Assembly: GCF_030684315.1 (NCBI RefSeq)
Contig: NC_081365.1
Coordinates: 39,089,830-39,153,829 of the forward strand
Direction: 5' to 3'
Length of the DNA stretch: 64,000 nucleotides
Origin: Stegostoma tigrinum
Lineage: Eukaryota
Position 1 is the first letter of the stretch, and each line of letters opens with the position of its first letter. Below, in pieces: positions 3,599-55,825 of this stretch. Under the pieces are notes generated by a model. The model worked only from the letters and a program-made list of their open reading frames with translations, was not told where the DNA came from and made no database searches. The position numbers and the translations under genes are program-made.

Positions 3599-3657
3599 TC
3601 ATATAAATGATTGCTGCTTTGTTTTCCTGAAGTCTTGTATCAATCTATTAAGTGCAC
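3599..3657 (-). CDS. Probable terminal coding exon of VJ gene 1: (G)ALNRLIQDFRKTKQQSFI*
   Basis: Minus-strand acceptor ...actaatggctcactcttttAG|GT. It is in phase 1, matching the V-exon donor, and is open to TGA at 3601-3599. No hydrophobic TM exon was found between it and the V exon. No canonical polyA signal was seen nearby. Confidence 0.5.
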
Positions 3658-5814
3658 CTAAAAGAGTGAGCCATTAGTTTCAGCACCTTCAATGCATAAA
3701 GGAACTGTCTATTGATGTCCACAGGATGGAGCCTCACATTAAGTTTTCTAGTTTTGTCAGTGGCATTGGCAGCACATTAATATTTTGAGAGGATATCAGT
3801 TGGGCCCCTCCTGATTCTCTCCTCCAGACATCCAAGAGCACAGGAGTGAGGGTGTCACCAAGGCGTTCCGAAGAGGTGACTGTCTTTGTGCCTGTGCAGC
3901 AGGGCCAAGGTGAGGAGGCTCCCCCTGCAATGATTCAAAAGCAGTTTCCTTTGGAGATTCTCCCATCCATACATCCATGATGAGGTTAACCACCACAGAT
4001 GACTCGTCTAAGATAAGTCAGCAGGATGCTCCCACCTTCTTTCAAAGAGAGAACCACATAGAATCAGCCAAGGGCAAAGGCTACTCTGTTAGGCAAAGAT
4101 AACAAGGTGTAGAGCTACAAGGTGTAGAGCTGGATGACAAAAATCCAACTCTCCACCTTGTTATCTCAGATTCTCCAGCATCTGCAGTTCCTACTATCTC
4201 TGTTAGGCAGAACATTGAGTGAGTCATTGTGTTTTCTCCTTGCTGCTTGCAATGTAATAATCTTTTCTAAATATAATAAAAATACTGACATTTGAAGGCA
4301 TGGGTATGAGTCTCCCTTTTTTGATGGTAAAATGTGAAGAAGGGTATAAAGTGGTGAAAGAGATAAAGAATTCCTCAGCAGTAATGCCAAAGGACAATGT
4401 GCATCATTCCTTGGCAGTGTGTACATGTTCCAGGCTGCGTTAGTGATGCCAAGGGATTTTTTTTGTTTTTGTTTGTTCATTCATGAATGTGGACGTAACT
4501 GGCTAGGCCAACATTTATTGCCTATCCTTAATTACCAGTGGGCAGTTAAGAGTTAACAACATTTCCGTGGTCTGCAGCCACATATATGTCAGTTCGGATA
4601 AGGACTGCAGTTTCCTTTTCTAAAGGACATAAGTGAACTAGACGGATATTTACAACAATTGACACTCAATAATCGTTGGCTTGTTTTAAAGTTCTAGATT
4701 TTTATTGATTCAAATTGATTCAAAGACTTTAGGGAGATTCCTAGAACTTTCTAGATGAGGGGCTTTACTGAAGTTTGGATAAATTGAAGAAGATTGTTCT
4801 CCTTAAAGGGAAGGTTGAGAGAAATTTTGATAGTATCAAACATCATGAGAAGCCCAGAGTAGAGATAGTTTCCATTGACCAAAGTTGTGGGGACCAGAGG
4901 ACACAGAGGAAAACATTTTTTTAAACTCAGTCTGTGGTTAGAGTCTGCAATACACTGCCTGAAAAGTTAGCAGAAGCAAATTCAACAGTGGCTTTCCAAA
5001 GGCATTTGGGTAAATACTTTGGGGTTGGGTAAAAAACCTCCAGTAATAGCATATATTTCCAAAATATTAACCAAAGGACATGTGCTGCTGCTTCATTGTG
5101 CTTTAATGTTGTTGAAATTCTAAGAAGGAACACATTACTTTGTGTGTGATTGCATCTTACATCTGAAACAATTTCTCCAAAGTACTAACCTGCCTTTGTA
5201 GCTACGTGTATTTCTGTGCACATTTTTGTGGCAGTTTAATCACCAACTAGTGAACACGATTTCACAAGCTATTTAGTGCTCTTGTAGTGCAGTGACAGCA
5301 TAACTTGAGCTGGGCCTGGATTCAAGTCCCAACTACTTCAGTGGTGTATTATAACGGGATGATTAAAACTTTTATAAAAGGCTCTCAGTTAAATTTGAGC
5401 TGGAGACATTCACTGGAAATGGCTGACGAGTGGAAAAGGACACGAGTTCTGACGAAGAGTAACCAGACTCTATGACCTTAACTCTGCTACCTGCTCACAG
5501 ATGCTGCCAGACCTGCTGAGCTTTGCCAGCAATTTCTGTTTTTGTGTTGGAAAAGAATTGCTGATTTAATGCCCAAATGCGTACTAGACAGAGCACCACA
5601 CAGTGGGAAATGTTCCACGCCACTATCAGAACAGCCTGGAGGGAGCTCTTTTAGGCTAGATTACAGACTTTCTCATAGTTTCATAATAATAGCTCATAAA
5701 CACTGCAAGTCCGGCCATTCAGGATTTTCAGATGTACGAAATTTGCTTTTTTTGGTATCCAAATCAATACCTAACCCAAACTATAGGCAGTTTCATTGAG
5801 ATATTTTCCCTTAC

Positions 5815-6162
5815 CTTGAACAATTAGGTGAGTGCCAGGGCCAGTGATCTTGCTCAGTTGTGAACCTTCACGAATGACCATGTTGCAATAATACAAACCA
5901 ATATCAGGATAGCGAAGACCTTTAATGAACAATATGCTGTGAAAATTAGGCATGTTGCCACTGAAGAAACTGAAACGACTATCCTCCTCAGTACTGATAT
6001 TTCTCACTTGCTTTTCACCAAATTCACTTTGGTAATGCCAGTAGAAATGGCCTTTCACTGCTTTGCCTTTGTATTGTAGAACGCAACTGAAACGGGCAGA
6101 GTGGTTTACCCGTAACCTCAGTAATGAGGGAGATTGTAGCAGCTCCAGTTCAGTGGCAGCAC
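5815..6162 (-). CDS. VJ gene 1 exon 2: single-exon germline-joined V-set Ig domain, NKp30/NCR3-like
   Basis: 348-nt phase 1-1 exon (tataatAG|GT ... CAAG|gtaagg) encoding (C)AATELELLQSPSLLRLRVNHSARFSCVLQYKGKAVKGHFYWHYQSEFGEKQVRNISTEEDSRFSFFSGNMPNFHSILFIKGLRYPDIGLYYCNMVIREGSQLSKITGPGTHLIVQ(G). It has the B-strand Cys, C-strand Trp, DxGxYYC and a J-type GxGTxLxV. Confidence 0.92.
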
Positions 6163-6274
6163 CTATTATAACACAATTTTGAAGTTAGTAAAAAAAAGAA
6201 CCATTCTAATAAACGTGCACAATACTAAATAGTTAATTATGCATGTTACTTAGAAGTAGAATCAATGTACTTAC

Positions 6275-6308
6275 ACACCGAATACAACAGCAATGTAATA
6301 ATCAACAT
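6275..6308 (-). CDS. VJ gene 1 exon 1: signal-peptide (leader) exon MLIITLLLYSV(C)
   Basis: ATG at 6308, hydrophobic codons, a phase-1 donor T|GTAAGT and a 112-bp intron to the V exon. This is the classic IgSF split-leader arrangement. Confidence 0.88.
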
Positions 6309-6324
6309 TATGCCTTCGTCACAG

Positions 6325-6410
6325 TGATAGGAACAACCACAGCTTCTGACTGAATAAAAGCAAGTGAGACACAATTTTGCAGCAATTACAGTTCCTCTTC
6401 CGTAACGGAA
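6325..6410 (-). promoter_or_regulatory. Putative promoter of VJ gene 1 with RUNX (TGTGGTT) and ETS/PU.1 (GAGGAACT, CGGAAG) motifs
   Basis: The motifs are read on the minus strand within about 100 bp upstream of the ATG. Function is inferred. Confidence 0.4.
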
Positions 6411-10850: not shown

Positions 10851-10854
10851 AAAC

Positions 10855-13061: not shown

Positions 13062-13595
13062 GATATAATAAAATGTGAGGCTGGATGAACACAGCAGGCC
13101 AAACAGCATCTCAGGAGCACAAAAGCTGACGTTTCGGGCCTAGACCCTTCATCAGAGAGGGGGATGGGGAGAGGGAACTGGAATAAATAGGGAGAGGGGG
13201 GGAGGCGGACCGAAGATGGAGAGAAAAGAAGATAGGTGGAGAGAGTGTAGGTGGGGAGGTAGGGAGGGGATAGGTCAGTCCAGGGAAGACGGACAGGTCA
13301 AGGAGGTGGGATGAGGTTAGTAGGTAGCTGGGGGTGCGGCTTGGGGTGGGAGGAAGGGATGGGTGAGAGGAAGAACAGGTTAGGGAGGCAGAGACAGGTT
13401 GGACTGGTTTTGGGATGCAGTGGGGGGGGGGGGGGGAAGAGCTGGGCTGGTTGTGTGGTGCAGTGGGGGGAGGGGACGAACTGGGCTGGTTTAGGGATGC
13501 AGTAGGGGAAGGGGAGATTTTGAAACTGGTGAAGTCCACATTGATACCATATGGCTGCAGGGTTCCCAGGCGGAATATGAGTTGCTGTTCCTGCA
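13062..13595 (-). mobile_element. Penelope-like element, 3' fragment with hammerhead core at 13128-13155
   Basis: Nearly identical to 59427-59953 in the opposite orientation; encodes the C-terminal QEQQLIFRLGTLQPYGIN. Confidence 0.95.
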
Positions 13596-15652
13596 TATAA
13601 CCTGTTTTCTCATCATTTCCAGAAATGTGCTGCTCTAAGGATCAAAATAAAATAATCTATTCCCCCATCTCAGTATCAGCACTCTGGTCTCATTCTGAAA
13701 CATGTGGGCTGCTGATGTCATCAGTCAAACTCGAGTCCTTTCATAAATGGGGTTTGGGCATTTCATGTGAACTCTTGCTGTTACATTGGTATTTTTATGG
13801 TGATAATCCACGCATGTTTGATGCAAGCACAGTCCACAAATCAAAAGAATAAAGCTTAATATTTTGAAATTAGTTTATTAAATAGGTTAAAACACAGAGT
13901 TAGCGCATTACATGTAATTTAAAATTCAAGCTTTAAAAGTCTGACGAACACAGGAAGGTTTAAAAAAAACAAAATCATAATAAAGTATATAAGGAAAGGC
14001 CTGATAATTTTTTTAAAAATCCAGCACTTCAATGTAACACAAATTGTTTCAGGCTTCAAAGAGTCAATTGTTTGTCATGGTCCATTGTCTTGATTAATCA
14101 AAACATTGTAAATTGAGCAGAGCCAATACAAAGGTATCTACATAAGTAGCACGTTGTGTTCATCTAAGTTAGTATAAAAAAAGTAGACAATAAAACAACA
14201 TCTCACACAAACTGATGGATTTTCATGTGCGTAGTCCATCACCCATGTTTGCCAATCTCTGGCAGCCATGATGAAGTTCCTATTCACAGCAAGTATCCTA
14301 CTATTAGGATTTATGCCTCTCCTAGCATCATTTACTTGCCACACTATCACATCTTGGGTATCCTTCCGCATCCCACTCCCCACTCAGCCCAAGAGTTGTT
14401 AGTCAGAGGCCAGCAGCTCTGCAATTTTGGTTCTGCAATAATGGCATTGTCACCAACAGTGACAGCTACTGCTCGCATTACAGTTAGTTAATGGAACGGA
14501 GAGTTCCATACCACCACCAGACTCCTCCCTCGGCTCCTTGATACTGGGTCCCTCTATCATGCACAGATGACAGGTGCCTCCACTTGTTGCTAGCTGAATA
14601 CCAATGATGATCTTATGAGGCACTTGAGTGGTTGTTTAAGAGCCTTGATTGCTTTCTGGACAACGGCTGCCAACCTGAACCTAAAATACACTGTTTACAG
14701 TGCAATGGTTGAAGTTAGTTTTAAGTATTTCAAACTGGCACAAAGCCGGTATTAAAAAAAAAACAGCTGTATGATTGAGATTATTTGAAATTTATAAAAT
14801 TGATTTAATTTTAATTGTGACTTCAGTATTGAGATCACTAAAGTTAAATCAATAAGTAAGAGCTAAACATCCATTCAGTATGATTCCATATTAATATAAA
14901 ATATGGATGCAAAATACGTATAATCTAATATAAACAAATTCACATACAAAATTATTGTGTTATAGATTGGGTACATTTCCACAAACAGCAGACACAATGT
15001 CTCCTTACCCAGATTTTTATTTCAAAATAAACATGCACCATTTAGTCAGAAAAAGTTCTGAATAAAACCAAGTTCAATTGAATCCATTGTTTGCTATCAC
15101 CAAAGTATATCACAGTATCCCATACAGCAATTTACATTCATTTCTCTCAGGCCTTGGTTTCTTGATCATACCTCCATTATTTTCAAGTGGTTTTTGTGCA
15201 TCATAACAAAAATGCATTGCTTCTAGTACAAGGTAATGCCATTTAAAAACGAGATCCTTTATTTTATTACACTGTGCTGCAGAGTATTCATTTGTGAAAT
15301 CTGAAATAAAAGTACATTGTTACCCCCTTGTTATTACTATAATGCAGAACTCAATATTTGAATCGGTGCTGGTTCAGTGAATGTTCAAGTTACTTCTCTT
15401 GGGATTATAACTGATAAATTAGTCAATTTGATAAGATCTGAAAAGTAATTAACAACAGCTAGATCAGAACATCTCTGTCTCTGTCCACATCTTATAATTA
15501 AAAACTATAGCAAACATTAAACTGGCTAAGTTTTGAGCACCCCTGAAGATCACAGATTCTTCCAGATTGGCTGAACAGCCATTACGTCAATGCAATTTCT
15601 TTTTAAAAAAAGATCAATCATAGGTTTGTGGTTTCCATGTCTTGGTTTTTTT

Positions 15653-21089: not shown

Positions 21090-21290
21090 CATTTCTGACT
21101 GGTTGTCAGGAGGCATTTCAGAACTTAAAAGCCATGTTAACCACAGCACCAGTTTTAGCCACACCAAACTTCTTGAAACCCTTTACAGTTGCTATTGATG
21201 CCAGTGATGTAGGGGTTTGAGCTGTGTTGATGCAGGAAGATGATGGAGGAATTTGAAAAGTCCACCAGAGAAAATACTCCACTTCAGTAT
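21090..21290 (+). mobile_element. Gypsy/Ty3 LTR-retrotransposon RT-RNase H fragment
   Basis: Translates to TTAPVLATPNFLKPFTVAIDASDVGV*AVLMQEDD. Confidence 0.7.
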
Positions 21291-22091
21291 CTGAGGAGTC
21301 GCAAATGATGCTGCGTATTTTGCAAACATCCCCTCTTCTTAACCTTATGATGGAGGGAAAGTCACTGATAAAGCTGAAAATGATTGGGTTCAGGACATCT
21401 ATCTTGAGGACCTCCAGAGTGATGTCTTGGAGCCCAGATGATTCAGCTCCAACAACCCCATTTACAAACCCATTAGTTTACCTCAGTCATCAACAACTGA
21501 TAAAATGGTATCAATGACAGTGCCATCCCATTAGTGACGCCAAGTTTAGGTTCTATCAGGGCCACTCAGCTGATAAACTCATCACAGCTTTGCTCCAAAC
21601 TGGAAGAGAGTTGAACCAAAAATAAATGCCTTTAACATCAAATCAACATTTGGTCAACATGAACCAACATTAAAAAAAGAGAAGGGTGAAGTTGCTGCAA
21701 AGATTTCAGTGCTGTAAAACAGCCCACTAAAATAATCTAACTCAGAACAAAAATAAAGAAACACAGAAAAAGAAGAAAAAGAAAAAGAAAAAAAAAAATC
21801 ACTTATACTTCACTCTCCATACCATATAATGAGCCACAAAACAACAGTGCTTCTAATTCAATATCCTTGGGGCATTTTTTGAGCAAAGTGTAAATCAGAA
21901 GTGTATATTTTACATAATTACATGCATGCTTTCTAGAGACAAGCATATCTAGGAGGTTAGATGCAACTAGAAAACCCACTTAGAAACACAAGAACTATTT
22001 TAAACCCTTAAAAGCTGCATTCAAGCCAGGATCCAAAAGGTATGAAGAGCCAAGTCAACTTACACCCTTGTGACCTCAATATGTAACTCAC

Positions 22092-34100: not shown

Positions 34101-34453
34101 CTGCATCTATAAGATAATCCTTTTTCTTCCAGTGATTATAGTGCTAAGCAAACATGGAAAACAGAGGTAGTCTTGCTTTACATTCATAACAGCTCCAGCA
34201 CGTTACCACCCTGGGACCACCAGCATTATCCACTTTCTTTATCACAGACATTCTCAATGCTTTATTTGCTAGACATCCTCATTTCATATCTGGCACGTCC
34301 CTTCCACTTGGCCACAATCTCACACTGAAATTTGTACATTGATCTCCAATTCTCGTCCTGCAACCAAATCCATTGAAAGTGGAACAATAATTCAAAAGCT
34401 TTAAAAGAAATTCAGTGCTTGAAAAGTTGTCAGTCTTTCATTCTCCTGCTTAC

Positions 34454-35190
34454 CTTCGCCCTGAAGGAGACACTTGCTGGGATCAAGTGTCTTTGTGACA
34501 ATGATTCCAAATACCTCAAATCCATTGCACTGTCCTGCTCTCTCCTGTTGCTGGAATTGTATTCCATCGTCCTCTCTGGGTTGAGTGCTGTAACTGGTCT
34601 TATTCAACAGTTTCAGCCGGTTGACTACCACACGTTTAGTTAGGAGGATTTCTACAGGAGAACCATTGGTGAGCAAGTGCTCAGTGAAATCCACTCCAGT
34701 CTTCATATCTGCCAGGATCTGTTGCAACTGGATCTGCTGAAGATTCAGGGAGTTTTCCTTCTGGATCCTCAGCTCTTCCAGCTCTTTCAAAAGGCTGCTC
34801 CGATGTTTCTCCAATGCTTTGATGTAATCCTCTGTAAACTTATTAATTTCTCCAGTTAAAGTTCTCAGTCGCTTTTGCACCAGCTGCCTTGTATCTGCAA
34901 TCTTTTGCAAAGTCTCCTGCAATCCAGCAATATGTGGCTGTGTTTGCTTCAGAAGCTGCCTGATGAAGCTGCCATATTTGTTAATGACATTAGCGACAAA
35001 GTCACAGTTATGGTCACGGTGGTCCACCATACAACAATCCCTGCACACCAAACAATCACATGTCTCACAAAACAGCCTCAACTCTTCTGCAGGGTGAACA
35101 AAGCACATGATGGACTTATTGACTCTCTCATTTCTACCTTGTAGGTCTGTAAGGGCCACTGTGTTGTGAGAAGCAGTCATCTTCTGCCTC
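34454..35190 (-). CDS. TRIM45: TRIM45 coding exon 2 (B-box 2 and coiled coil)
   Basis: 737 nt, phase 2-1, tcccctgcAG|G AGG CAG AAG...GAAG|gtaagc. Contains the CFVH...FCETCD...CRDC...H B-box followed by a helical coiled coil. Confidence 0.96.
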
Positions 35191-35389
35191 CTGCAGGGGA
35201 TGGATGGATTTGCCTTACAGTTTAAATAATATGACAACCAAGATTTAAAAATACTTACTTAAATTACATGCATTTTTTAATCTTAAAAAAATCATGACTC
35301 ATCACTGTGTTCAAATAAAGATATATTTTGCTGAGAAACAGACAGATCCAGCCAAAAGAATAAACCATTGCGGCTGACCAAGCAAGTTA

Positions 35390-38230: not shown

Positions 38231-38306
38231 AATTGGAATCACTGTCTGACAGACCTGATAAAATTTAAATGAAGACCGATTACAAATCCAATGACCTGGG
38301 CTTTAC

Positions 38307-38746
38307 CTGTGTGCTTCAGAGCAGAAATCGCAGAGATTTGTTGAGCAGACGTGACATCTTCTTTCAGCATTTCCATCGTTGCAAAGATCACAGACTATCC
38401 GGTAGTCAGGTCTCTTCAGACTCTCCAGGAAAACTTCATTCTGAATCAGATGGTTACCGGTCAGTTCTCGCAGGCCAGCAGCGGGTACGTTCACTTCATA
38501 GTCGCAGGCTGGACACAGGATACAGATCCTAGACTCGGTGCAGTCGAGTGACCCAGATTCACCCTCTCGCTGAGTTCTGGGAATTGAGAACTGCTGTAAC
38601 CCTCTCACACAGTCCAGGCAGAATGTATGAAGACAGGGCAAGATCCTTGGATCAGTGTAAGTGTTTTTACAAATCGAACACTTTGTCCTGCAGCTCCTTG
38701 GTGATTCTGAACTGGGTACAAAAGTATTTTCCTGACTCGCCGACAT
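38307..38746 (-). CDS. TRIM45: TRIM45 first coding exon (RING and B-box 1)
   Basis: ATG at 38746, 440 nt to donor CACAG|gtaaag (phase 2). Contains the CSIC...PCLHTFCLDC...CPAC RING and the CDLC...CHVC...LCDFCSEAH B-box. The six exons sum to 1698 nt (565 aa plus stop) with consistent phases. Confidence 0.96.
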
Positions 38747-39610: not shown

Positions 39611-39621
39611 CGTTTTATATC

Positions 39622-40610
39622 GAGCCAAGCAGCATCTCAGGAGCACAAAAGCTGACGTTTCGGGCCTAGACCCTTCATCAGAAAAGGGGGATGGGGTGAG
39701 GGTTCTGGAATAAATAGGAAGAGAGGGGGAGGCGGACCGAAGATGGAGAGAAAAGAAGATAGGTGAAGAGTGTATAGGTGGGGAGGTAGGGAGGGGATAG
39801 GTCAGTCCAGGGAAGACGGACAGGTCAAGGAGGTGGGTTGAGGTTAGTAGGTAGGAGATCGAGGTGCGGCTTGGGGTGGGAGGAAGGGATGAGTGAGAGG
39901 AAGAACAGGTTAGGGAGGCAGAGACAGGCTGGGCTGGTTTTGGGATACAGCGGGGGGAGGGGAAGAGCTGGGCTGGTTGTGTGATGCAGTGGGTGGAGGG
40001 GACGAACTGGGCTGGTTTTGGGATGCGGTGGGGGAAGGGGAGATTTTGAAGCTTGGGAAGTCCACATTGATACCATTGGGCTGCAGGGTTCCCAAGCGGA
40101 ATATGAGTTGCTGTTCCTGCAACCTTCGGGTGGCATCATTGTGGCACTGCAGAAGGCCCAGGATGGACATGTCGTCTAAGGAATGGGAGAGAGAGGCGAA
40201 ATGGTTTGCGACTGGGAGGTGCAGTTGTTTATTACGAACCAAGTGTAGGTGTTCTGCAAAGCGGTCCCCAAGCCTCTGCTTGCTTTCCCCAATGTCGAAG
40301 AGGCCACATCGTGTACAGCGGATGCAGTATACCACATTGGCGAATGTGCAGGTGAACATCTGCTTAATATGGAAAGTCATCTTGGGGCCTGGGATGGGGG
40401 TGAGGGAGGAGGTGTGGGGGCAGGTGTAGCAATTCTGCCATCTGCAATCCGACCCCACCGAAGACATTATTTCCACCCCACCCTTGCCTGCTTTCTGGAG
40501 GGATCACTCTCTCCGTGACTCCCTCGTCCGCTCCACGCTTCCCTCCAACCCCCCCCCCCCCCCCCCCCCACACCCGGCACTTCCCCTGCAACCGCAGGAA
40601 GTGCTCCACA
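39622..40610 (-). mobile_element. Penelope-like element, 5'-truncated, with an inverted 5' segment (about 40436-40610)
   Basis: GIY-YIG domain (NVVYCIRCTRCGLFDIGESKQRL) on the minus strand; the adjoining upstream piece is present on the plus strand. Hammerhead core at 39654-39681. Confidence 0.92.
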
Positions 40611-43025: not shown

Positions 43026-44079
43026 AGAGATAATGGGAACTGCAGATGCTGTAGAATCCAAGATAATAAAGTGTGGAGCTGGATGAACACAGCAGGCCAA
43101 GCAGCATCTTAGGAGCACAAAAGCTGACGTTTCGGTCCTCGACCCTTCATCAGAGAGGGGGATGGGGAGAGGGAACTGGAATAAATAGGGAGAGAGGGGG
43201 AGGCGGACTGAAGATGGAGAGAAAAGAAGATAGGTGGAGAGGAGAGTATAGGTGAGGAGGTAGGGAGGGGATAGGTCAGTCCAGGGAAGACGGACAGGTC
43301 AAGGAGGTGGGATGAGGTTAGTAGATAGGAAATGGAGGTGCGGCTTGGGTGGGATGAAGGGATGGCTGAGAGGAAGAACAGGTTAGGGAGGCAGAGACAG
43401 GCTGGGCTGGTTTTGGGATGCACTGGGGGGAGGGGATGAACTGGGCTGGTTGTGTGATGCAGTGGGGGGAGGGGACGAACTGGGCTGTATTGGGATGCGG
43501 TGGGGGAAGGGGAGATTTTGAAACTGGTGAAGTCCACATTGATACCATTGGGCTGCAGGGCTCCCAGGCGGAATATGAGTTGCTGTTCCTGCAACCTTCG
43601 GGTGGCATCATTGTGGCACTGCAGGAGGCCCATGATGGACATGTCATCTAAAGAATGGGATGGGGAGTTAAAATGGTTCGTGACTGGGAGGTGTAGTTGT
43701 TTATTGTGAACCGAGCGGAGCTGTTCTGCAAAGTGGTCCCCAAGCCTCCGCCTGGGTTTCCCCAATGTAGAGGAAGCCACACCGGGTACAATGGATGCGA
43801 TATACCACATTGGCAGATGTCCAGGTGAACGTCTGCTTAATATGGAAACTCATCTTGGGTCTTGGGATGGGGGTGAGGGAGGAGGTGTGGGAGCAAGTGT
43901 AGCACTTCCTGCGGTTGCAGGGGAAGGTGCCAGGTGTGGTGGGGTTGGTGGGCAGTGTGGAGCGGACAAGGGAGTCACGGAGAGAGTGGTCTCTCCGGAA
44001 GGCAGACAAGGGTGGGGATGGAACAATGTCTTGGGTGGTGGGGTCGGATTGTAGATGGCGGATGTGTCGGAGGATGATG
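43026..44079 (-). mobile_element. Penelope-like element, 5'-truncated, with a 10-bp TSD
   Basis: Frameshifted GIY-YIG region. cttttaagtg is duplicated at 43016-43025 and 44080-44089. Hammerhead core at 43126-43153. Confidence 0.93.
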
Positions 44080-45724
44080 CTTTTAAGTGGTTGGATTCAC
44101 TCATCAACCACAAAGCTCATGAAAATGTTCTTTGGCTGAGCTTTTCTGCACTGTATTAGAAAAATATACAAATGCAATCCACAGTCCAGACACCTCTATT
44201 TATATGAACCTTTCTGCACTTTGAACTCTTTTTGATATGGACTTTGCAAGCTTGTGGTGCAGTCACATTTTTAACCAAAATGCACAGTTTAGGTTTAGTA
44301 TATATTTACACAATAAGTGATTAGATGAAGATACTAAATACAAACAATACGATGGCCTAAATAATAGAAGAGCGTCCCTTCATCCCATTGCACCACCATG
44401 TCCTCAACGTACCACATTTCCAAATGGCAGATAACATTACCATGCACTCACTGAAGAAGATAACATGGTAAAACCACACAGCAAGACTTCCCCTTCACAA
44501 AAGTGAATATCGAGAGGAAACTGAAAGCAATTGGTTTTCAGTTATTTTTTTGGAAAAAAACTGGATATTTACCCAATTAAGAGTATCAGTTGTGTTATTG
44601 TTATACAGAGAAAGCATTTTACCGTTGGAATAGGAGTCATGCTTTAACCATATAAATGCTGAAAGCTGACATGGATGTTATTCTTTGGTAAACTAAAGAG
44701 AATAAAGGCTTTAAAATGTGCTCAAATTTCCCGTTTGGTTTTCTGATAATTCATTCTCTCTTTTAAAGATTATTTGATCCACTCAGTTTCTATATGATGA
44801 GAACCTGGATCAAGAACCTTTGTCCAAGTTGCACTGATACTTTTGAATTAATGCAAATCCAAAAATGTTGTCATCTATGCGGAAATGGTATGCAACAAAA
44901 TATATAAGCCAACCTTAGATTGTTAAATGACTACTGTGCCTTTTCAGGTTTTATTAATCAAACTAAATCTCTTGGAACAGATAAAAATGTAAATATACTT
45001 GCAATAATGTTATCCAATCTGCCAATAAATGATTTTATGGGTTTTTTTGGCTGTGAAATTAATGATAATAGTAACAACACTAGTCTTATTCTGCACAATT
45101 CACAAAATTAAACTTGAAAGTCTGGACGTTGCTTCCTATGATATTGCTACATCCCTGTAAAATTTACAAAGATAGTATTTCACTGGCTGGATTCACAATT
45201 AAATGTGTAGAATAAAGTGAACTTGCAGTACCTGGTACTTGCATAATAAATATGGATTAAGTCCACAAGATTGAAAGGGAGCTCATCCATTTGAATCGAA
45301 GTATCCTTGTAATGATGTGGTATGTTTTATTTACTTCCAAACAACATCCCCAGCCCTGAAAATTCAATTTTTCAGGAATGTGGAGCCATCCCTTGAGGTT
45401 TTCGTTATTACTTGGTATTTAAAAGAAATTTAAATACTTTGTAAGACCTTTTCTTTCTGAATATTGGATTTTATCGCTGAATCTAATATTATTGTAACCA
45501 GCTGATTTTATTTTCTGTATGTAATTTTAAAAGTAAATTAAGTATTCTAACTGATATTTCCATGCCTAGATTCTAAACCTCATCAGTTCAGGTTGTTTAT
45601 TTGTAAATTAGACTCTTGATATCTATTAGTTTATTGTAGATGGTTGTACAAGAAAGATAAATAGGTCAGCAACAAGAATGCACTCCAGCCCACCCCACAA
45701 CACTCCACAACCCACACACATGAA

Positions 45725-45819
45725 GGGTCTGATGAAGGGTCTAGACCCGAAACGTCAGCTTTTGTGCTCCTGAGATGCTGCTTGGCCTGCTGTGTTCATC
45801 CAGCCTCACATTTTATTAT
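45725..45819 (+). mobile_element. Minimal PLE insertion consisting of the hammerhead core (45729-45756) plus the 3' terminus, with an 8-bp TSD
   Basis: cacatgaa at 45717-45724 and 45820-45827; CTGATGA-A-GGGT[CTAG]ACCC-GAAAC-GTC. Confidence 0.85.
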
Positions 45820-46587
45820 CACATGAACCAGAAGGTGGTTGAAGGATTTCAAACCTAAATGTTGCTTTGCTTTCCTTCCAGCCACAGACAGGCACATCAC
45901 GTATCACCATTGTAGCCATCTGTAAATAAATGGTGGTTATATATTAAGATATTAATCTAGTAATGTCAGTCATCACACTAAAAGTGCACAGGTGAAAAAT
46001 AAGATGTTTTTTCATTGAGGTCCACTGTAGCAATGTTATGGTCAAACACATTGTCTTAGGGAATTAGTTATATCTGCAACTGGAACAGAAGCCTACAGCA
46101 GTGTAATCATCAGTGCAACAAACATTTAACAATGCAGAAAAATTGCAGTCAATATGTACAGGTTGTTATTGAATGTTTTCCAGAACACTCGATAAAGTCC
46201 AGTAAGATTTGTTTATGATGGAATTAGGTTCTTTACAAATGGAATTAATATTATCTCACCTAGTGTTGCAGGGCTGTGGAAAATGCTTGAGGAATAGGGT
46301 GTGCTGTGTTGCTGTTGCAGAGAGTCAACAGAAGCACCTTGAGTCAAACAGCCTCCTTATGTGTTATAACTATTCTATGATATACGTTCAGTAAGAACCT
46401 TCAAAGTAAAATTCGGTGAGTATGTGAGGGAGAAAAACATTCCAGGATACAGAAAAAGAGTTAGATTCTTGTCTTCCTCTTTGAAAGAATTGGCTCTGAC
46501 TGGAAGGACTGAATTACTTACTTTTCGGCTGCTCTTTTCTATGAAAAAGAGAAATGGAAATACACACAAGTTTATCTTGAGATGAGA

Positions 46588-47515
46588 AAGAGATAACAAA
46601 GTGTGGAGCTGGATGAACACAGCAGGCCAAGCAGCATCATAGGAGCACAAAAGCTGACATTTCGGGCCTAGACCCTTCATCAGAGAGGGGGATGGGAGAG
46701 GGTTGTGGAATAAACAGGGAGAGAGTGGGAGACAGATCGAAGATGGATAGAGGAGAAGATTGGTGGAGAGGAGACAGACAAGTTAAAGGAGTGGGGAGGG
46801 AGTGAGGAGACGTGAGTGTAGGTGGGGAGGTTGGGAGGGCATAGGTGAGTCTGGGGACGACGGACAGGTCAAGGGGGCGGTTTGAGGTTAGAAGGAAGGA
46901 AATGAGGGTGTGGCTTGAGGTGGGAGGAGGGGATAGGTGAGTGGAAAGACAGGTTGGGGGCGCAGGGATGAGCTGGGCTGGTTTTGGGATGCAGTGGGAG
47001 GAAGGGGAGATTTTGAAGCTTGTGAAATGCATATTGATACCATTGGGCTGCAGGGTTCCCAAGTGGAATATGAGTTGCTGTTCCTGCAACCTTCGGGTGG
47101 CATCGTTGTGGCACTGCAGGAGGCCCAGGATGAACATGGCGTCTAAGGAATGGGAGGGAGAGTTGAAATGGTTCGCGACTGGAAGATGTGGTTGTTTATT
47201 GCAAACCAAGCGTAGGTGTTCTCCTTGGTTTCCCCGCTGTAGAGGAGGCCACAACGGGAACAGCAGATGCAGTATACTGCATTGGCAGATGTGCAGGTGA
47301 ACATCTGCTTGATGTGGAAATTCTTCTTGGGGCCTGGGATGGGGGTGAGGGAGGATGTGTGGGGGCAAGTGCAGCACTTCCGGCAGTTGCAGGGCTAAGT
47401 GCCGGGTGTAGTGTGGTTGGACCGGAGTGTGGAGCGAACAAGGGAGTCACAGAGAGAGTGGTCCCTCCACAAAGCAGACAAAGGTGGGAATGGAAAAATG
47501 TCTTTGATGGTGGGG
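46588..47515 (-). mobile_element. Penelope-like element, older and more diverged copy
   Basis: Same GIY-YIG/3' sequence with indels (ORF 46637-47377). Confidence 0.9.
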
Positions 47516-49074
47516 TGATATTGGCATGCTCTGTGTGCTAAGTGCTGAACTTAGTGTTTCATTCCATGTTGAATACAAAATGATAAGTAATGCAGACAAG
47601 ATGTTCTCCAAATTGGACTTCCCAAAAGTAAAACAGTTCAATTCTTCAAGCAAAGGAATCAGTAATAGTTGTGTATTTAATCTGGCACTGACCAGTGGGA
47701 GCTGTATAGTACAGAATAGCAATTACCCTTAATTTCTCTGCAGCAATTAAGCAGCAGTGATGGTCATGGCGGTTTTTTTCAAAAAATTGTAGTTTGAGAC
47801 AAAATGGCTAAAAGAAAAAGATAAGAAATGCTGTTAGCAATATATATTGGATACTATTCAAAATGAAAATTACTGCAATACTAGTCGTTATTGTATATTA
47901 ACAGCACAGCAATCCTACTGCTGAACTTAAGGAACTACATATCTCCATCTGGTGTGTAAAAAACAATTTATCATAATCTGTTCCATTTGTTTTGCCTTTT
48001 ATCCTACATGCTTCAATTTTGCTAATAATCCAAATTTTGTACCTTATCAAAAAACTTCTGGAAGTACACGTACACAACATTTATTGCAATACCTTCATCA
48101 ATTCTCCTTGTTGCCTCATCAAAAAAAAACTCCATCAAGGCAATCATGCACAATTTGTCCTTTAGAAATCCAGCCTGGTTCAACTTTATTAGTCCAAGTA
48201 ACGATCAATTTTCTACTTCTTTGGCACCAGTTTTTGGGTAAATTTCCCAGGTTAGTACTCTTTCTAGTGCTTCCATTCGTTTAACCTTCACATTATCCCA
48301 AAGCTTCGTTCACCTTCATTGGCAAAGTCATCTTTCATCAATAAGCGTGAATAGATCGCAAGCACTTTTTTGGCCTGCCCCAATTGTTTCCATTTTAGGC
48401 ATGCAATGTAGACTGTAAAGACCATTTTTTTAATGTTTCTGTGTTTTTGATCTTGGACTGCAAGGTTGAAAAGCCAAGAATTTTCAAAAGATCGCTACAT
48501 ATTTTAAAACCAATTAATTTGAAACTTATTGTAAGTGCTGTTTAAGGAACTGTTGGTTCAGATTGTGGGGGAAAGTCAAGTTGTAGACAAGTTAGTGACA
48601 ACAATGTGTGACGAATGGAGATTTGACCAGAAACATGTAGCAGATTAGCCAGTTATTGATGACAAATACCTTCTGCTTGCCAACATTTTGTCATTGGCTC
48701 CCAGATAGTCTAACAGTTGGGAGGTGTGAATGTTTGGATAGAAGCCATAAAACATCTGGAAGTAAAGGAGCTAACCAGGTGGAGTATCACGAGGAAGTGA
48801 AGGAATTGTTTTTTGCTCTGCTGAAAAAAAAATGCATCTCAAGCCTAAAAGTAGACAGCTTAGTTCTCCCATCAGTTACTTTAAGCTTTAAATAATAAGT
48901 CAGAGACCTTTATTAGTGTCAAACAGTTGCCCTGTGCCTCCTGCAAACAAGTGAGAAAACCAGAAGAAGGAAGATGAGGAAGCAGTGCTCTGATCAGGAG
49001 TAGGATCATCTCAGGAAGTCCTTCAAAAAGGATCATTGCGCTGCCTTCCTGTCTTTCTCTCTGCCCATAATACC

Positions 49075-49205
49075 AATTTCTGAAGAAGGGTCTAGGCCCG
49101 AAACGTCAGCTTTCCCGCTCCTCTGATGCTGCTCGGCCTGCTGTGTACATCCAGCTCCACACCTTGTTATCTCGGATTCTCCAGCATCTGCAGTTCTTAT
49201 TATCA
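49075..49205 (+). mobile_element. PLE 3' terminus with an intact hammerhead core (49080-49107)
   Basis: CTGAAGA-A-GGG[TCTAGG]CCC-GAAAC-GTC followed by the family-A terminus. Confidence 0.85.
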
Positions 49206-50122
49206 CTATTATCCGAGACGAAAAGCAGAAACTGCCGGAGAACCTCGATTCACGATTCGAGTCTACTATGAGCCTTTCTTTATTGGAGTCGAAAGGTTTA
49301 CCGTGCTTCCGTCTTCACAGATGCAGCCAGACTGCTCTGTTAGAATGTGACACATTGGAACCTTTTGAACTTCTTTTTACCGACCACTGAGAACATAAAA
49401 AGATTGAAACAGAGACAAAAACACTGGGTTAAGTTTTTGGTATTCGCTTAGGGTTTTAGACCGACAGGTGTAAGTGTTTCCATTGAGATTGGGATCGTAA
49501 AAGTACAAGAGGGCACTGAGACTGACAAAACTCATTCCCCTCTCAGGAAGCATGGCTAGTGTTTTTATATGATTGTGGGGAGGTAGGTTGGATTGATTGT
49601 CTGTTACACCCTCAGATACACTATTATAGAAAAGGAAGGAGCGTGCTCTAAGTCCACTCATTAAATGGTACTCATTATGTTAGGAAGAGTTTAAAACCAT
49701 TGACACTCGGGAGGAATGTATGATACATCTGTATTTATCATTTTGACAAACGAATCAACTTTAAGCCTCGGTTAAAAAGTGAAGAAGCAGAAGAATGCCT
49801 TAATAGGTTGTGAATCCATAGTCCACAGTCACTTAATCTCACCCTGTGAATTTCATTTACATTCCAGGAATGATACAGTACCGCATCTTTCTTGTGGTAA
49901 TGAGTTTGTTTCTGCTCCAGTGTGTGTTTAGCTCCCCAAGTGAACGGTCAGTGATTAGACTATTTAGCAGAGTTTTTTTTAGAAAAAGAAGATAAACGTT
50001 TGCATCTCTTTGACTTTATCTCTCAAATGTTCTGGTGGCAACGTCAACTCGTTGTCAACAAATAATGACACGGTACTTGTTAAATTTACAAGTCTGGTAC
50101 AAACGATTTGTCATGGCAATTT

Positions 50123-52012
50123 GTATCAGCGATAGTGGGAACTGCAGATGCTGGAGAATCCAAGATAACGAAATGTGAGGCTGGATGAACACAGCAGGCC
50201 CAGCAGCATCTCAGGAGCACAAAAGCTGACGTTTCGGGCCTAGACCCTTCATCAGAGAGGGTGATGGGGTGAGGGTTCTGGAATAAATAGGGAGAGAGGG
50301 GGAGGCGGACCGAAGATGGAGAGAAAAGAAGATAGGTGGAGAGGAGAGTATAGGTGGGGAGGTAGGGAGGGGATAGGTCAGTCCAAGGAAGACGGACAGG
50401 TCAAGGAGATGGGATGAGGTTAGTAGGTAGGAGATGGAGGTGCGGCTTGGGGTGGGAGGAAGGGATGGGTGAGAGGAAGAACAGGTTAGGGAGGCAGAGA
50501 CAGATTGGACTGGTTTTGGGATGCAGTGGGTGGAGGGGAAGAGCTGGGCTGGTTGTGTGGTGCAGTGGGGGATGGGGACGAACTGGGCCGGTTTTGGGAT
50601 GCGGTGGGGGAAGGGGAGATTTTGAAGCTTGGGAAGTCCACATTGATACCATTGGGCTGCAGGGTTCCCAAGCGGAATATGAGTTGCTGTTCCTGCAACC
50701 TTCGGGTGCCATCATTGTGGCAATGCAGGAGGCCCATGATGGACATGTCATCTAAAGAATGGGAGGGGGAGTGGAAATGGTTTGCGACTGGGAGGTGCAG
50801 TTGTTTATTGCGAACCGAGCGGAGGTGTTCTGCAAAGCGGTCCCCAAGCCTCCGCTTGGTTTCCCCAATGTAGAGGAAGCCACACCGGGTACAGTGGATG
50901 CAGTATACCACATTGGCAGATGTGCAGGTGAACCTCTGCTTAATGTGGAAAGTCATCTTGGGACCTGGGATAGGGGTGAGGGAGGAGGTGTGGGGGCAAG
51001 TGTAGCATTTCCTGCGGTTGCAGGGGAAGGTGCCGGGTGTGGTGGGGTTGGAGGGCAGTGTGGAGCGAACAAGGGAGTCATGGAGAGAGTGGTCTCTCCG
51101 GAAAGCAGACAGGGGTGGGGATGGAAAAATGTCTTGGATGGTAGGGTCGGATTGTAGATGGCGGAAGTGTCAGAGGATGATGCGTTGTATCCGGAGGTTG
51201 GTGGGGTGGTGTGTGAGAATGAGGGGGATCCTCTTTGGGCGGTTGTGGCGGGGGCAGGGTGTGAGGGATGTGTTGCGGGAGACGCGGTCAAGGGAGTTCT
51301 TGATCACTGTGGGGGGAAGTTGCGGTCCTTGAAGAACTTGGACATCTGGGATGTGTGGGAGTGGAATGCCTCATTGTGGGAGCAAATGCAGCAGAGGTGG
51401 AGGAATTGGGAATAGGGGATGGAATTTTTGCAGGAGGGTGGGTGGGAGGATGTGGATTCTCGGTAGCTCTGGGAGTCGGTGGGCTTGAAATGGGCATCAG
51501 TTACAATCTGGTTGCCTGAGATGGAAACTGAGAGATCCAGGAAGGTGAGGGATGTGCTGGAGATGGCCCAGGTGAACTGAAAGTAGGGGTGGAAGGTGTT
51601 GGTGAAGTGGAGGAACTGTTCGAGCTCCTCTGGGGAGCAAGAGGCAGCGCCGATACAGTCATCAATGTAACGGAGGAAGAGGTGGGGTTTGGGGCCTGTG
51701 TAGGTGCGAAAGAGGGACTGTTCCACGTAACCTACAAAGAGGCAGGCATAGCTGGGGCCCATGTGGGTGCCCATGGCCACCCCCTTAGAGTGTAGGAAGT
51801 GGAAGGAATCGAAAGAGAAGTTGAGGGTGAGGACGAGTTCGGCTAGGCAGATGAGGGTGTTGGTGGAGGGGGACTGGTCGGGCCTGCGGGACAGGAAGAA
51901 GCGGAGGGCCTTGAGGCCCCCTGGCCCCCAACACCTCATTTTCACCATGGACGTCCAGTCCCTATACACCTGTATTCTGCATGCAGATGGCCTCATCCAG
52001 CCTCACATTTCA
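50123..52012 (-). mobile_element. Penelope-like element (RT plus GIY-YIG) with a 5' inversion and a 15-bp TSD, inserted in the pseudogene V exon
   Basis: RT motifs GVAMGTHMGPSYA and RYIDD plus GIY-YIG on the minus strand. TMDVQSLYT is inverted on the plus strand at about 51921-51994. ttgtcatggcaattt occurs at 50108-50122 and 52013-52027. Confidence 0.95.
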
Positions 52013-52494
52013 TTGTCATGGCAATTTTTTCGCTTAACAAAATGTTTGAGGCGTCACTTTGAAACCATGAAATAATGGAATGATTCCAAATAAGATTATG
52101 TAGGACCTGAAATTATTGTAAACAGGCTAGTTAGACATCGTCTACAAGCATTGATAACTATTAACTTTCAGGAAATGTATATTTTATAGAATTAAATAAG
52201 CAGAGAGCATCACAATAGATTACTACTGCCACAGATTGAGATCAACAGTGTTGTAGGTAAAATATTACCAAATACAATTTAGTAGTGAGTCAGACTCAGC
52301 TTTATTAACAAAAGCTTTTGGGAGAAGCGAGGATCTCAAAGCGGCTTCACCAAATTTCTCAGCTATTATAGACGATTTCAAAGCTTATATACATTTGCTG
52401 TTACTCGCCACTCTCCCCCAGTCACGAACACAGTTCCTTAACCTGTTCCAGGCGACTCACAATCATCAGACGTTGCCTCCACAGCTTCGGTCTA

Positions 52495-52565
52495 ACGCTC
52501 CACTTCCTTTATCGGAGTTGTCGTGCTGTTCGTTTGCAGGATCTTCCTGTTTCACCACAGTTCTG
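52495..52565 (-). promoter_or_regulatory. RUNX + ETS motif cluster upstream of the pseudogene first-exon donor
   Basis: Minus strand: TGTGGT (52559-52554), CAGGAAG (52549-52543) and AGGAAGTG (52508-52501), followed by ATGATT|GTGAGT at 52466-52455. Confidence 0.5.
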
Positions 52566-53718: not shown

Positions 53719-54479
53719 ACTATTCAAATGCAGGTTTCACTTTCTCTTTTTCCAGCTTTACATCATCAATAAACTTGAATAATTATACTTTATTTCTATA
53801 TCCAAGTTCTTGATATGAACAATAGCCGAGGTCCTTGACTTGCCAAATGCAGTCTGTCAACCCAACGATGACTGTTTGCACTCTCTCCATGTTATCAATA
53901 TGACGTTTGTCTTGTGCAGCACCTAATTGATCATTTCTGAAAATCCAAATACACCTTCGCCCCAGATCTACCCTTCTAGCTATATCCTCAAAAACCAATA
54001 ATTTGTGGAACATGTCTCCCTATTGTAAGGTCAGGTTGACTCTGTATGCTCATGATTTTCTAAATGCAATGAAGTCGTGTACCTATTGAACGAATCATGT
54101 ATTTTCCATACTGTCTACATAACCTCGAGGAACATCCTCCAGCCCGCCCCCAAGCCAGCCCAGCAATCCACCATCTCCACCAACAACAACCCTTCAAACA
54201 CAAAAGTGCACAAAGAAATAGACGCAGAACATTTACGCACTGCATTGATAATGATTTCACCACATACCATGTTTAAAGAGCCGTATCCGCACCAGAATGC
54301 CCTTTTACAAACATCCCCAAAATTGAGCTGGTCCCCGAGTACCGGTCGGTGGTGAGCAGCAGTCAATGTGGTGTGACACAGTGCTCGCTACACCCGCATC
54401 AATCTCGCTGCGACTTGAATTTCCCGCATGATAACCAATATTTCCAAGTAACCCGTGAGGCAGCGTCATCCTCAGTAAC

Positions 54480-54516
54480 ATGGGCGCAGTTCTCAGGCTC
54501 TGGCTCTTGGTCTTAG
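54480..54516 (+). CDS. VJ gene 2 exon 1: leader MGAVLRLWLLVL(G)
   Basis: Good Kozak context (aacATGG), hydrophobic peptide, phase-1 donor TTAG|gtaagg and a 95-bp intron. Confidence 0.9.
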
Positions 54517-54611
54517 GTAAGGATTCACTTTGATTCCAGCTAGAAGTCATTACAGTTAGACTTGGATTCCGTGGAGCTAATGGTCCCATTTGTTGCCTTG
54601 TTATGTTCCAG

Positions 54612-54953
54612 GGCCTGTTGTCCCTCTGGAAGTGATTGAGTCTCCTCCAGTTCTCTCCCTCCTGAGAGGACAGACGGCTCGGATCTACTGTAGCCTGATA
54701 CCGGGGGAGGAGCTGGCTGATTTTGTGAAATATTATTGGTGTCGGGCAAGAGACGCTCCTGATTTGAACAGCAACATATCCAGGATCTTCGTGAAAAACA
54801 GCCCCCGTGTGTCCGTGTCTATGTCTGAGAGTTTTCTCATTATCCGGGAGCTGATGCTGAATGATTCGGACACTTACCGATGCGTGGTTCTTAGAGAGAA
54901 ACCTCGGCCCTGGAAATACTTCCTGGGAAATGGAACAACATTGAACGTCCAAG
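54612..54953 (+). CDS. VJ gene 2 exon 2: single-exon germline-joined V-set Ig domain
   Basis: 342-nt phase 1-1 exon (ttatgttccAG|GG...CAAG|gtaatt) encoding PVVPLEVIESPPVLSLLRGQTARIYCSLIPGEELADFVKYYWCRARDAPDLNSNISRIFVKNSPRVSVSMSESFLIIRELMLNDSDTYRCVVLREKPRPWKYFLGNGTTLNVQ. It has the Cys, Trp, DSxTYxC and GNGTTLNV motifs. Confidence 0.93.
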
Positions 54954-55644
54954 GTAATTGTGAAAGATCGTAAATATTCAGCAGATTGGGTTGCATCTGG
55001 AAACAGAAACAGGTCACGGTTCAGAGAAACGACCTTTGCTGATAAACTGTTCACCAGTAAAACCTCCAGCTTCTTCCAGTTCTCACCAAAACACGCCGAC
55101 CTGAGCCGTGACCTGTTTCTGTTCCCACAGAGACTGCCTGAGTATTTCCAGCAACCGTGATATTTTGTTTCTGATTCAGTCTGGACAGACTAGACAGGGA
55201 GAGGCTATCCCATGTCCGAAACCAAGCGGTACAGGCTGACACTGAATATCTCAAGAAGCAGAATCCACATGAGGGTTCGGTTTTAGCTCGCACTGCCGCA
55301 GAGTGTGGCGGACACAGATTCAATCGGGAATTTTAAAACAGGTTGGGACAACAACCTGAAGAGGAGCATTCCAAAGAGAAACATTTTTCAGAGTTGCCGA
55401 AAGAGCCGAGTTGCTCCGGCTCAGTATGGACACGATGGGCCAAATCGCCTCGGTCTGTGCAGAGGCCTTTCTCTGACTCGATTAAGGGAGAACGAAATAG
55501 CTCAATGTGCGAGAGAAGGAAACAGAAATAGTGCCCAGAAACACACTAATATAAACCAGACTGGGGGTTCTTTGGGATCGAATGGTTCGCCCGGGACGAT
55601 CTTTAATCTGACGGTAACCCCTCACCACCTCCTTTTCTATTTAG

Positions 55645-55682
55645 AACCTTTCAGTCCAGATCCTTTTCAAAACTTAGTTTGA
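55645..55682 (+). CDS. VJ gene 2 probable terminal exon (E)PFSPDPFQNLV*
   Basis: Strong acceptor cctccttttctatttAG|AA in phase 1, TGA at 55680-55682, AATAAA at 55740-55745 and a T-rich downstream element. Confidence 0.7.
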
Positions 55683-55825
55683 AGAAAAACGTCCAAAAGA
55701 CAAACTTCTGTAATCCGAAACCCAACAAGTCAAAGACCGAATAAAACGAAACTGATTTTGGGACAAAGGTTCATTTTTTTATCATTTCCCGGAATATACT
55801 GAAGTAAAAAAAACACAAAACCGAG

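What the first reader, a model, noticed from the sequence alone, without database searches (positions are those of the whole stretch)
3599..55745. Cluster of non-rearranging germline-joined VJ Ig genes surrounding TRIM45: candidate undescribed shark immune receptor system
Seen: three IgSF loci flank TRIM45, each with V and J-like (GxGT) sequence in a single exon and no RSS at V/J junctions. Two look intact and apparently lack TM exons; the third is a VJ-C1-TM pseudogene. They are very divergent from each other, so they are not recent duplicates. Established: human TRIM45 lies at 1p13 beside VTCN1 (B7-H4), CD101, PTGFRN, CD2 and CD58. Single-exon VJ genes (NKp30, CD28 family, CD8B, PRARP/VJC1-type genes) are regarded as relatives of the pre-RAG antigen-receptor ancestor. 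Inference: this may be a relic 'primordial receptor' locus that pairs a membrane VJ-C1 chain with soluble VJ partners or decoys, and that is absent from the mammalian locus.
Basis: partly seen in the sequence, partly recalled or inferred. Interest (0 to 1): 0.88.

Follow-up and report, generated by a model that had tools for sequence, protein, structure and literature searches.

The report
Two shark V-domain genes flanking TRIM45
Two of the three claimed immunoglobulin-type genes beside shark TRIM45 are real, but one is only the front end of an already-annotated inhibitory receptor gene, the second is a fast-evolving V gene whose tail is unknown, and the third is not there, so this is not a new receptor system.

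Summary
Partly confirmed. The window matches zebra shark (Stegostoma tigrinum). TRIM45 (38.7-34.4 kb, minus strand) is real.

Two leader-plus-V exon pairs flank it. Each has a J-like GxGT strand inside a single exon and no recombination signal sequence (RSS).

- **V3 (54480-54953, plus strand)** is 99% identical to residues 1-126 of a 367-aa RefSeq protein named "SIRP-alpha-like". That protein is V-C1-TM with four ITIM/ITSM motifs. Its family occurs in at least 13 elasmobranch species. The C1, TM and tail exons are not in the window, so "secreted, no TM" is most likely a window-edge artefact.
- **V1 (6308-5815, minus strand)** is intact. Its only close relative is a bamboo-shark model named "CD8-beta-like" (65% identity), whose tail looks repeat-derived. 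V1's 3' exons are unresolved.
- **The third locus**, the "VJ-C1-TM pseudogene" at 45-52 kb, has no support from tblastn, HMM or Pfam. That stretch holds Penelope-type retroelement fragments.

No RNA data were available, and the V1-V3 pairing test gave no verdict.

The kind of gene, a non-rearranging VJ-C1 ITIM receptor (SIRP, PRARP, UrIg), is known. This scan had already noted the same family on other DNA of this genome.

The parts
6275..6308 (-). Gene A (V1) leader exon: ATG at 6308, 11 codons plus 1 base, donor GT at 6274-6273
   Evidence: Sequence read directly. The leader is split and in phase 1, as in antigen-receptor-type V genes.
5815..6162 (-). Gene A (V1) V exon with a J-like G strand (YYC...ITGPGTHLIVQ). 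Phase 1 at both ends: acceptor AG at 6164-6163, donor GT at 5814-5813
   Evidence: Pfam V-set E 9.8e-07, 29.4 bits. It is 65% identical to XP_043556870.1 of Chiloscyllium plagiosum. The best solved relatives are Ig kappa V domains, E 3.8e-06. DNA runs confirm the sequence and show two nonsynonymous variants, R23H and H74R.
34401..35258 (-). TRIM45 exon: B-box 2 and coiled coil
   Evidence: Pfam zf-B_box 2.6e-07. The best PDB hit is the TRIM45 coiled coil, 8sdi, 4.9e-18.
38303..38746 (-). TRIM45 first coding exon: RING and B-box 1
   Evidence: Pfam zf-RING_UBOX 8e-10 and zf-B_box 0.0026.
45147..52466 (.). Claimed VJ-C1-TM pseudogene: not supported. The stretch holds Penelope-like retroelement fragments (46637-47377 and 50489-52002, minus strand) and other repeats
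   Evidence: No Ig signal from Pfam, from tblastn with ten V-C1-TM proteins, or from the family HMM on open frames and on stop-masked frames. A weak GIY-YIG match lies at 50489-51169 (E 8e-4, below Pfam's own cutoff).
54480..54516 (+). Gene C (V3) leader exon: ATG at 54480, 12 codons plus 1 base, donor GT at 54517-54518
   Evidence: 13 of 13 residues are identical to the N-terminus of the S. tigrinum protein P0043. Sequence read directly.
54612..54953 (+). Gene C (V3) V exon with a J-like G strand (YRC...FLGNGTTLNVQ), phase 1 at both ends. It equals residues 14-126 of the RefSeq 'SIRP-alpha-like' V-C1-TM-ITIM protein
   Evidence: Pfam V-set 7.8e-08. It is 99.1% identical to P0043 and P0048 of Stegostoma tigrinum. 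It sits inside a starred (98/99) elasmobranch clade. The C1, TM and cytoplasmic exons are absent from bases 1-64000.

Best explanation
The window is a zebra-shark TRIM45 neighbourhood carrying the 5' ends of two unrelated-looking, non-rearranging V(J) genes.

**Gene C (54.5 kb, plus strand, head-to-head with TRIM45)** is the leader and VJ exon of a conserved elasmobranch receptor. That receptor has one V domain, one C1 domain, a TM segment and a tail with four ITIM/ITSM-type tyrosines (LHYASV, TEYAIL, VDYSTV, TTYASL). Its remaining exons lie more than 9 kb downstream, beyond the window. It most likely works like SIRP-alpha or PRARP: the V-C1 ectodomain binds an unknown ligand and the phosphorylated tail recruits SH2 phosphatases to damp cell activation. 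The architecture is shown. The signalling is inferred from the motifs.

**Gene A (6 kb, minus strand, downstream of TRIM45)** is a separate, faster-evolving VJ-type V gene that is kept open in two orectolobiform sharks. Its 3' exons are unknown. They may lie outside the window, or the gene may be V-only.

**The third 'pseudogene'** is over-reading of repeat-rich DNA.
For: - **V-set domains.** Both V exons are above the Pfam cutoff. Splice sites and phases were read directly.
- **V3 identity.** V3 is 99% identical to residues 14-126 of P0043, and the leader is 13/13 identical.
- **Family architecture.** The P0043 family carries Pfam V-set plus C1-set and is named SIRP-like in at least 13 elasmobranch species. 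Its best solved relative is human SIRP-alpha, 4.6e-20, with one contiguous V-C1 alignment.
- **Tree.** The V tree places V3 in a 14-member elasmobranch clade (98/99). Sharks form a starred subclade within it, and four of the five ray sequences form a weakly supported (88/65) group. V1 plus P0001 form a separate starred pair.
- **V1 constraint.** V1 and P0001 differ at 35% of residues but by only one in-frame indel. Cys, Trp, YYC and GxGT are all kept.
- **No rearrangement signals.** There is no RSS.
- **No third locus.** There is no Ig signal at 45-52 kb.
Against: - No RNA run holds V1. The four holder runs are genomic DNA, so expression and splicing of either gene are untested here.
- V3 differs from P0043 by one residue (Y for D at residue 38). 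A scan note reports a four-ITIM VJ-C1 gene 102 kb before the window. V3 could therefore be a partial duplicate rather than the annotated gene itself.
- P0043 is a pipeline model.
- The bamboo-shark V1 orthologue is modelled without C1 or TM, which leaves room for a V-only gene.
Confidence: 0.72

Rival explanations
1. Three linked VJ genes form a relic 'primordial receptor' locus, in which soluble V-only proteins (V1, V3) pair with or act as decoys for a membrane VJ-C1 chain.
For: Two intact VJ exons with split leaders flank TRIM45. The bamboo-shark V1 orthologue is modelled without a TM. No TM-like exon was recognised in the window downstream of either V exon.
Against: V3 belongs to a V-C1-TM-ITIM protein. 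The third gene is not detectable. Only 5.8 kb and 9 kb of window lie downstream of the two V exons. There is no expression data.
Confidence: 0.06
2. V1 is a functionless leftover: the leader and V exon of a duplicated V-C1 receptor gene that lost its 3' exons and is decaying slowly.
For: - V1 evolves about 2.3 times faster than V3 over the same species split (path 0.52 against 0.21-0.23).
- Both variants seen in four DNA runs are nonsynonymous.
- The only orthologue model ends in a tail that resembles a repeat, and it has only a weak, non-significant (E about 7) out-of-register echo in the window at about 5065-5042.
- No RNA holder was found.
Against: The ORF, both splice sites, the start codon and all fold-defining residues are intact in two species. 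Only one in-frame indel separates them despite 35% divergence. This is hard to get without selection for an open frame (inference).
Confidence: 0.25
3. V3 in this window is a recent partial duplicate (leader plus V only) of the annotated SIRP-like gene, whose complete copy lies elsewhere, for example the gene noted 102 kb before the window.
For: There is one amino-acid difference from P0043. No downstream exon is found in 9 kb. Scan note s1-881492 reports a four-ITIM VJ-C1 gene nearby. Hemiscyllium has two close copies.
Against: A single difference fits allelic or assembly variation. The 9 kb after the V exon is filled with retroelement fragments (RVT_1 at 55829-56239 by Pfam; the Penelope-like ORF at 58334-59638 had no Pfam hit), which fits a long intron. 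Only one S. tigrinum gene was recovered.
Confidence: 0.15

Closest known systems
Elasmobranch 'SIRP-alpha-like / SIRP-beta-1-like' RefSeq gene models (e.g. XP_038658211.1 S. canicula; S. tigrinum P0043)
   Same: V3 is 99% identical to the S. tigrinum member and 47-84% identical to the others. It has the same leader and the same VJ exon.
   Different: Only the first two exons are in the window. I found no paper that describes this family.
Mammalian SIRP-alpha (PDB 2wng)
   Same: It is the best solved relative of the full protein, E 4.6e-20, with a contiguous VJ-to-C1 alignment that includes the G.GT.L.V.AKP junction. From my own knowledge, it also has four tyrosine motifs in its tail.
   Different: The shark protein has one C1 domain, not two. 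From my own knowledge, human SIRP genes lie at 20p13 and not beside TRIM45. The ligand is unknown.
PRARP (chicken non-rearranging VJ-C genes; Fu et al. 2019, cited in PMC10751288 and PMC11599192)
   Same: It is the same kind of gene: a non-rearranging joined VJ domain gene listed with SIRP, CD8, NKp30 and CD79 (PMC11599192).
   Different: The paper and its sequences are not held here, so homology was not tested. PRARP is cited as MHC-linked (PMC10751288), whereas this locus is TRIM45-linked.
UrIg / UrIg2 (PMC12227049; PDB 9dmx)
   Same: These are elasmobranch, non-rearranging genes with a split leader and a single-exon VJ followed by C1-type domains. 9dmx is the top hit of the family profile and the second hit of P0043.
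   Different: UrIg genes have many C domains (nurse-shark UrIg2 has nine) and lie in the MHC or the antigen-receptor complex. The rank is inflated by the several C1 domains. V3 alone does not pick out UrIg2.
CD8 beta and NKp30
   Same: Each has a single V domain with a J-like strand in one exon.
   Different: V1's best solved relatives are Ig kappa V domains. Neither CD8 nor NKp30 is among the best 60. No stalk or TM exon was found, and no CD8A or MHC linkage is seen in the window.

Membership tests
Elasmobranch SIRP-like V-C1-TM-ITIM family (gene C) | N-terminal V-set domain with a J-like G strand in one exon behind a split leader | tested here: met
Elasmobranch SIRP-like V-C1-TM-ITIM family (gene C) | Falls inside the family clade in a V-domain tree | tested here: met
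   the clade has 98/99 support, and V3 pairs with the S. tigrinum protein at 100/98.
Elasmobranch SIRP-like V-C1-TM-ITIM family (gene C) | C1-set domain, TM and ITIM/ITSM tail encoded downstream | tested here: inconclusive
   These are present in the 99%-identical protein P0043, but the exons are absent from the window. The sequence after base 64000 is not available.
Mammalian SIRP family (orthology) | V-C1-C1 ectodomain | tested here: not met
   There is one C1 domain in P0043 and in most members. Only Hypanus has two.
Mammalian SIRP family (orthology) | Conserved synteny with the SIRP cluster | not testable with these tools
   The locus is TRIM45-linked. The human SIRP location is known to me only from memory.
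PRARP | Sequence homology and orthologous position to chicken PRARP genes | not testable with these tools
UrIg / UrIg2 | VJ followed by three or more C1-type domains; MHC or AgRC linkage | tested here: not met
   The protein has a single C1 domain, and the gene is TRIM45-linked.
Rearranging Ig/TCR V genes | RSS heptamer and nonamer at the 3' end of the V exon, with a separate J | tested here: not met
   The J-like strand is contiguous with the V exon. There is no RSS near either exon, and the one match in the window is at chance level.
CD8 beta (gene A) | V domain followed by stalk, TM and short tail; linked to CD8A | tested here: inconclusive
   No such exons lie in the 5.8 kb downstream. CD8 is not among the best 60 solved relatives. 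The window ends too soon to exclude them.
TRIM45 | RING, two B-boxes, coiled coil; closest to TRIM45 among TRIMs | tested here: met
   The C-terminal filamin exon was not located.

The most novel reading that the evidence does not exclude
The TRIM45 neighbourhood lies on the chromosome-1 paralogue of the MHC. It may be a conserved third home in cartilaginous fish, besides the MHC and the antigen-receptor complex, of non-rearranging antigen-receptor-like VJ(-C1) genes. V1 would then be a living, fast-evolving V-only member.
Probability: 0.15. Interest if true: 0.7.

Novelty: new member of a known kind. Interest (0 to 1): 0.35.

Why it matters
Non-rearranging VJ-C1 genes are used to reason about what the RAG transposon invaded (PMC12227049, PMC10751288).

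A conserved elasmobranch VJ-C1-ITIM receptor beside TRIM45, on a region that I recall (own knowledge, not tested here) counts as an MHC paralogue, would add a data point to that argument. The family appears unnamed in the literature.

As it stands, the window shows only two leader-plus-V exon pairs. One of them is already annotated, so the gain is mainly a corrected annotation and a lead for synteny work.

Tried and rejected
- **Word-index searches.** With the V3 frame the search found nothing, because its relatives are longer than the length limit. With the V1 frame it found one protein.
- **The look-up of encoding contigs was closed.** I therefore had no genomic context or DNA for the orthologues, no synteny check and no dN/dS.
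- **Third locus.** I tried Pfam on ten frames, tblastn with ten family proteins, the family HMM on open frames and on stop-masked six-frame chunks, and motif scans. All were negative.
- **A weak V-like frame at 21121-21477 (minus strand).** It scores E about 1 against the HMM and has no Pfam hit, so I rejected it.
- **Sequencing runs.** There are no RNA holders. The four runs laid on the window are genomic DNA.
- **Complex prediction on V3 with V1.** No verdict, score 0.00. This is evidence neither for nor against binding.
- **AlphaFold2 of V1 from a 3-row alignment.** Mean pLDDT was 46.7, too poor for a fold search.
- **Hydrophobic-segment scan downstream of both V exons.** It gave no convincing TM exon.
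- **Filamin exon of TRIM45.** Not located.
- **PRARP paper.** Not held.
- **Spliced models.** They were searched exon by exon by reference. The joined leader-plus-V protein was not built or searched.
Full report
**What is in the window**

The window has no N runs. On the minus strand, ORFs at 38746-38303 and 35258-34401 encode a RING, B-boxes and a coiled coil. Their best solved relative is human TRIM45 (8sdi, E 4.9e-18). The TRIM45 call is therefore right. Its C-terminal filamin exon was not located.

**The V exons**

Motif scans and phmmer over all open frames find exactly two Ig V domains.

- **V1.** A leader (ATG at 6308, ending at 6275, donor GT) is followed by a 112-nt intron and a V exon at 6162-5815, on the minus strand.
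- **V3.** A leader at 54480-54516 is followed by a 95-nt intron and a V exon at 54612-54953, on the plus strand.

Both V exons are phase 1 at both ends. Both score above Pfam's V-set cutoff (29.4 and 32.9 bits against 26). Both carry the B-strand Cys, the C-strand Trp, YxC and a contiguous J-like strand. RSS-like heptamer-spacer-nonamer matches are at chance level (1 seen, 0.78 expected) and none is near a V exon. The two V domains are 27% identical.

The 'single-exon VJ, no RSS, divergent' observation therefore holds for two loci.

**Gene C (V3)**

An exhaustive HMMER search found 32 relatives. The best were proteins of 290-436 aa that NCBI names SIRP-alpha-like or SIRP-beta-1-like in catshark, sawfish and stingray, and leaves uncharacterised in the electric ray. 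Their alignment shows V(J), C1, TM and a tail with ITIM/ITSM-type tyrosines.

A profile search listed the family in at least 13 elasmobranch species, plus a distant Callorhinchus protein, with Pfam V-set and C1-set domains.

V3 is 99.1% identical to residues 14-126 of the Stegostoma tigrinum protein (P0043, 367 aa). The leader is 13/13 identical. This also identifies the window's species.

Nothing in bases 1-64000 matches P0043 beyond about residue 126. The C1, TM and tail exons therefore lie outside the window, more than 9 kb downstream. The DNA in between carries a reverse-transcriptase fragment and a Penelope-like ORF. The 'compact secreted 138-aa gene' reading is therefore most likely a window-edge artefact.

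In a V-domain tree, V3 sits in a starred elasmobranch clade (98/99). Sharks form a starred subclade, and four of the five ray sequences form a weakly supported group. This is the pattern of an old, mostly single-copy gene.

The best solved relative of P0043 is human SIRP-alpha (4.6e-20), through one contiguous V-C1 alignment. UrIg2 and Ig light chains follow. UrIg2's first place with the family profile is inflated by its several C1 domains.

**Gene A (V1)**

The only close relative found is XP_043556870.1 of Chiloscyllium plagiosum, 171 aa, named CD8-beta-chain-like and 65% identical.

Its 47-residue tail contains a stretch like a repeat that is scattered through the window (ACTPAVFFNP against AAGPAVFIQP). 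It has only a weak, non-significant (E about 7), out-of-register echo at about 5065-5042. It therefore looks like an annotation artefact or a non-conserved terminal exon.

V1 matches the V-C1-TM family HMM at 1e-11. In the tree, however, it forms its own long-branched pair with the bamboo-shark protein (100/99). That pair evolves about 2.3 times faster than V3 over the same species split.

V1's best solved relatives are Ig kappa V domains, not CD8 or NKp30. The language-model atlas calls it antigen-receptor-like.

The ORF, the splice sites and the fold residues are intact in both species, with one in-frame indel. I read this as selection for an open frame (inference).

Four DNA runs confirm the sequence and show two variants, both nonsynonymous.

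No C1 or TM exon is recognisable in the 5.8 kb that the window holds downstream.

**The third locus**

The stretch 45147-52466 gave nothing in any of these tests:

- Pfam on ten frames.
- tblastn with ten family proteins.
- The family HMM on open frames.
- The same HMM on stop-masked frames, where no score exceeds 0 bits. The same model finds the 29%-identical V1 at 36 bits.

The stretch holds Penelope-type fragments, with a weak GIY-YIG match below Pfam's cutoff. I treat this locus as not real.

**Expression and pairing**

No RNA run holds V1. The holder runs are genomic DNA. The V1-V3 complex test gave no verdict. A V1 model was too poor to use.

**Literature**

Joined-VJ, non-rearranging genes are an established class: CD79, NITR, SIRP, CD8, NKp30 and PRARP (PMC11599192). 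UrIg and UrIg2 are the recent elasmobranch VJ-C1 examples (PMC12227049, PMC10751288). I found no paper on a TRIM45-linked or 'SIRP-like' shark family. The PRARP paper is not held.

**Earlier scan notes**

Notes report the same kind of gene on other pieces of this genome and one 102 kb before this window. I did not test those.

**Limits**

- Spliced models were searched exon by exon. The joined step was left out.

**Verdict**

Two real VJ exon pairs flank TRIM45. One belongs to a known-kind, pipeline-annotated inhibitory receptor. The other is an unresolved fast-evolving V gene. The third locus and the 'soluble partner' system are unsupported.

Noticed in passing
window 58334-59638 (+), 50489-52002 (-), 46637-47377 (-), 43109-44096 (-), 39910-40476 (-), 13111-13596 (-): There are at least six Penelope-like retroelement copies or fragments, with the YIGETKRRLGDRFAEH endonuclease motif. 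The copy at 58334-59638 keeps a 434-aa open frame. Only 50489-51169 gave a Pfam GIY-YIG match, and it is weak and below Pfam's cutoff.
   Followed up: partly
window 776-2060 (-) and 55829-57076 (+): Two reverse-transcriptase (RVT_1) fragments of a LINE-type element. One lies in the presumed long intron after the V3 exon.
   Followed up: partly
window 4100-4300 and 5300-5700: An extremely high-copy short repeat, with summed contig depth of 1e5-1e6 in the DNA runs. One copy lies 100-500 bases downstream of the V1 exon. A similar repeat seems to supply the C-terminus of the bamboo-shark 'CD8-beta-like' model.
   Followed up: partly
window 6093 and 5940 (V1 exon): Two single-base variants among four DNA runs, both nonsynonymous (R23H in all four runs, H74R in one). 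No synonymous variant was seen.
   Followed up: partly
protein P0035 (Pristis pectinata XP_051869794.1): This family member has the same V-C1 ectodomain but a different membrane segment carrying Arg and His, and almost no tail. That suggests paired activating and inhibitory forms, as with SIRP-beta and SIRP-alpha.
   Followed up: no
protein P0004 (Hypanus sabinus): The C1 domain is tandemly duplicated (V-C1-C1) in this ray, unlike the single C1 of the shark members.
   Followed up: no
window 54710-54760 (V3 C strand, YYWCRARD): An extra Cys directly follows the conserved Trp. It is seen only in the zebra and epaulette shark proteins, and other species have W, F, T or S there. It is therefore not a family feature.
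   Followed up: partly
representative-search hits P0008, P0011, P0013, P0022, P0023: Shark multi-V proteins, one named PTGFRN-like, are significant V3 relatives (E down to 6e-11). They form a separate starred clade. PTGFRN and CD101 are TRIM45 neighbours in human (own knowledge).
   Followed up: no
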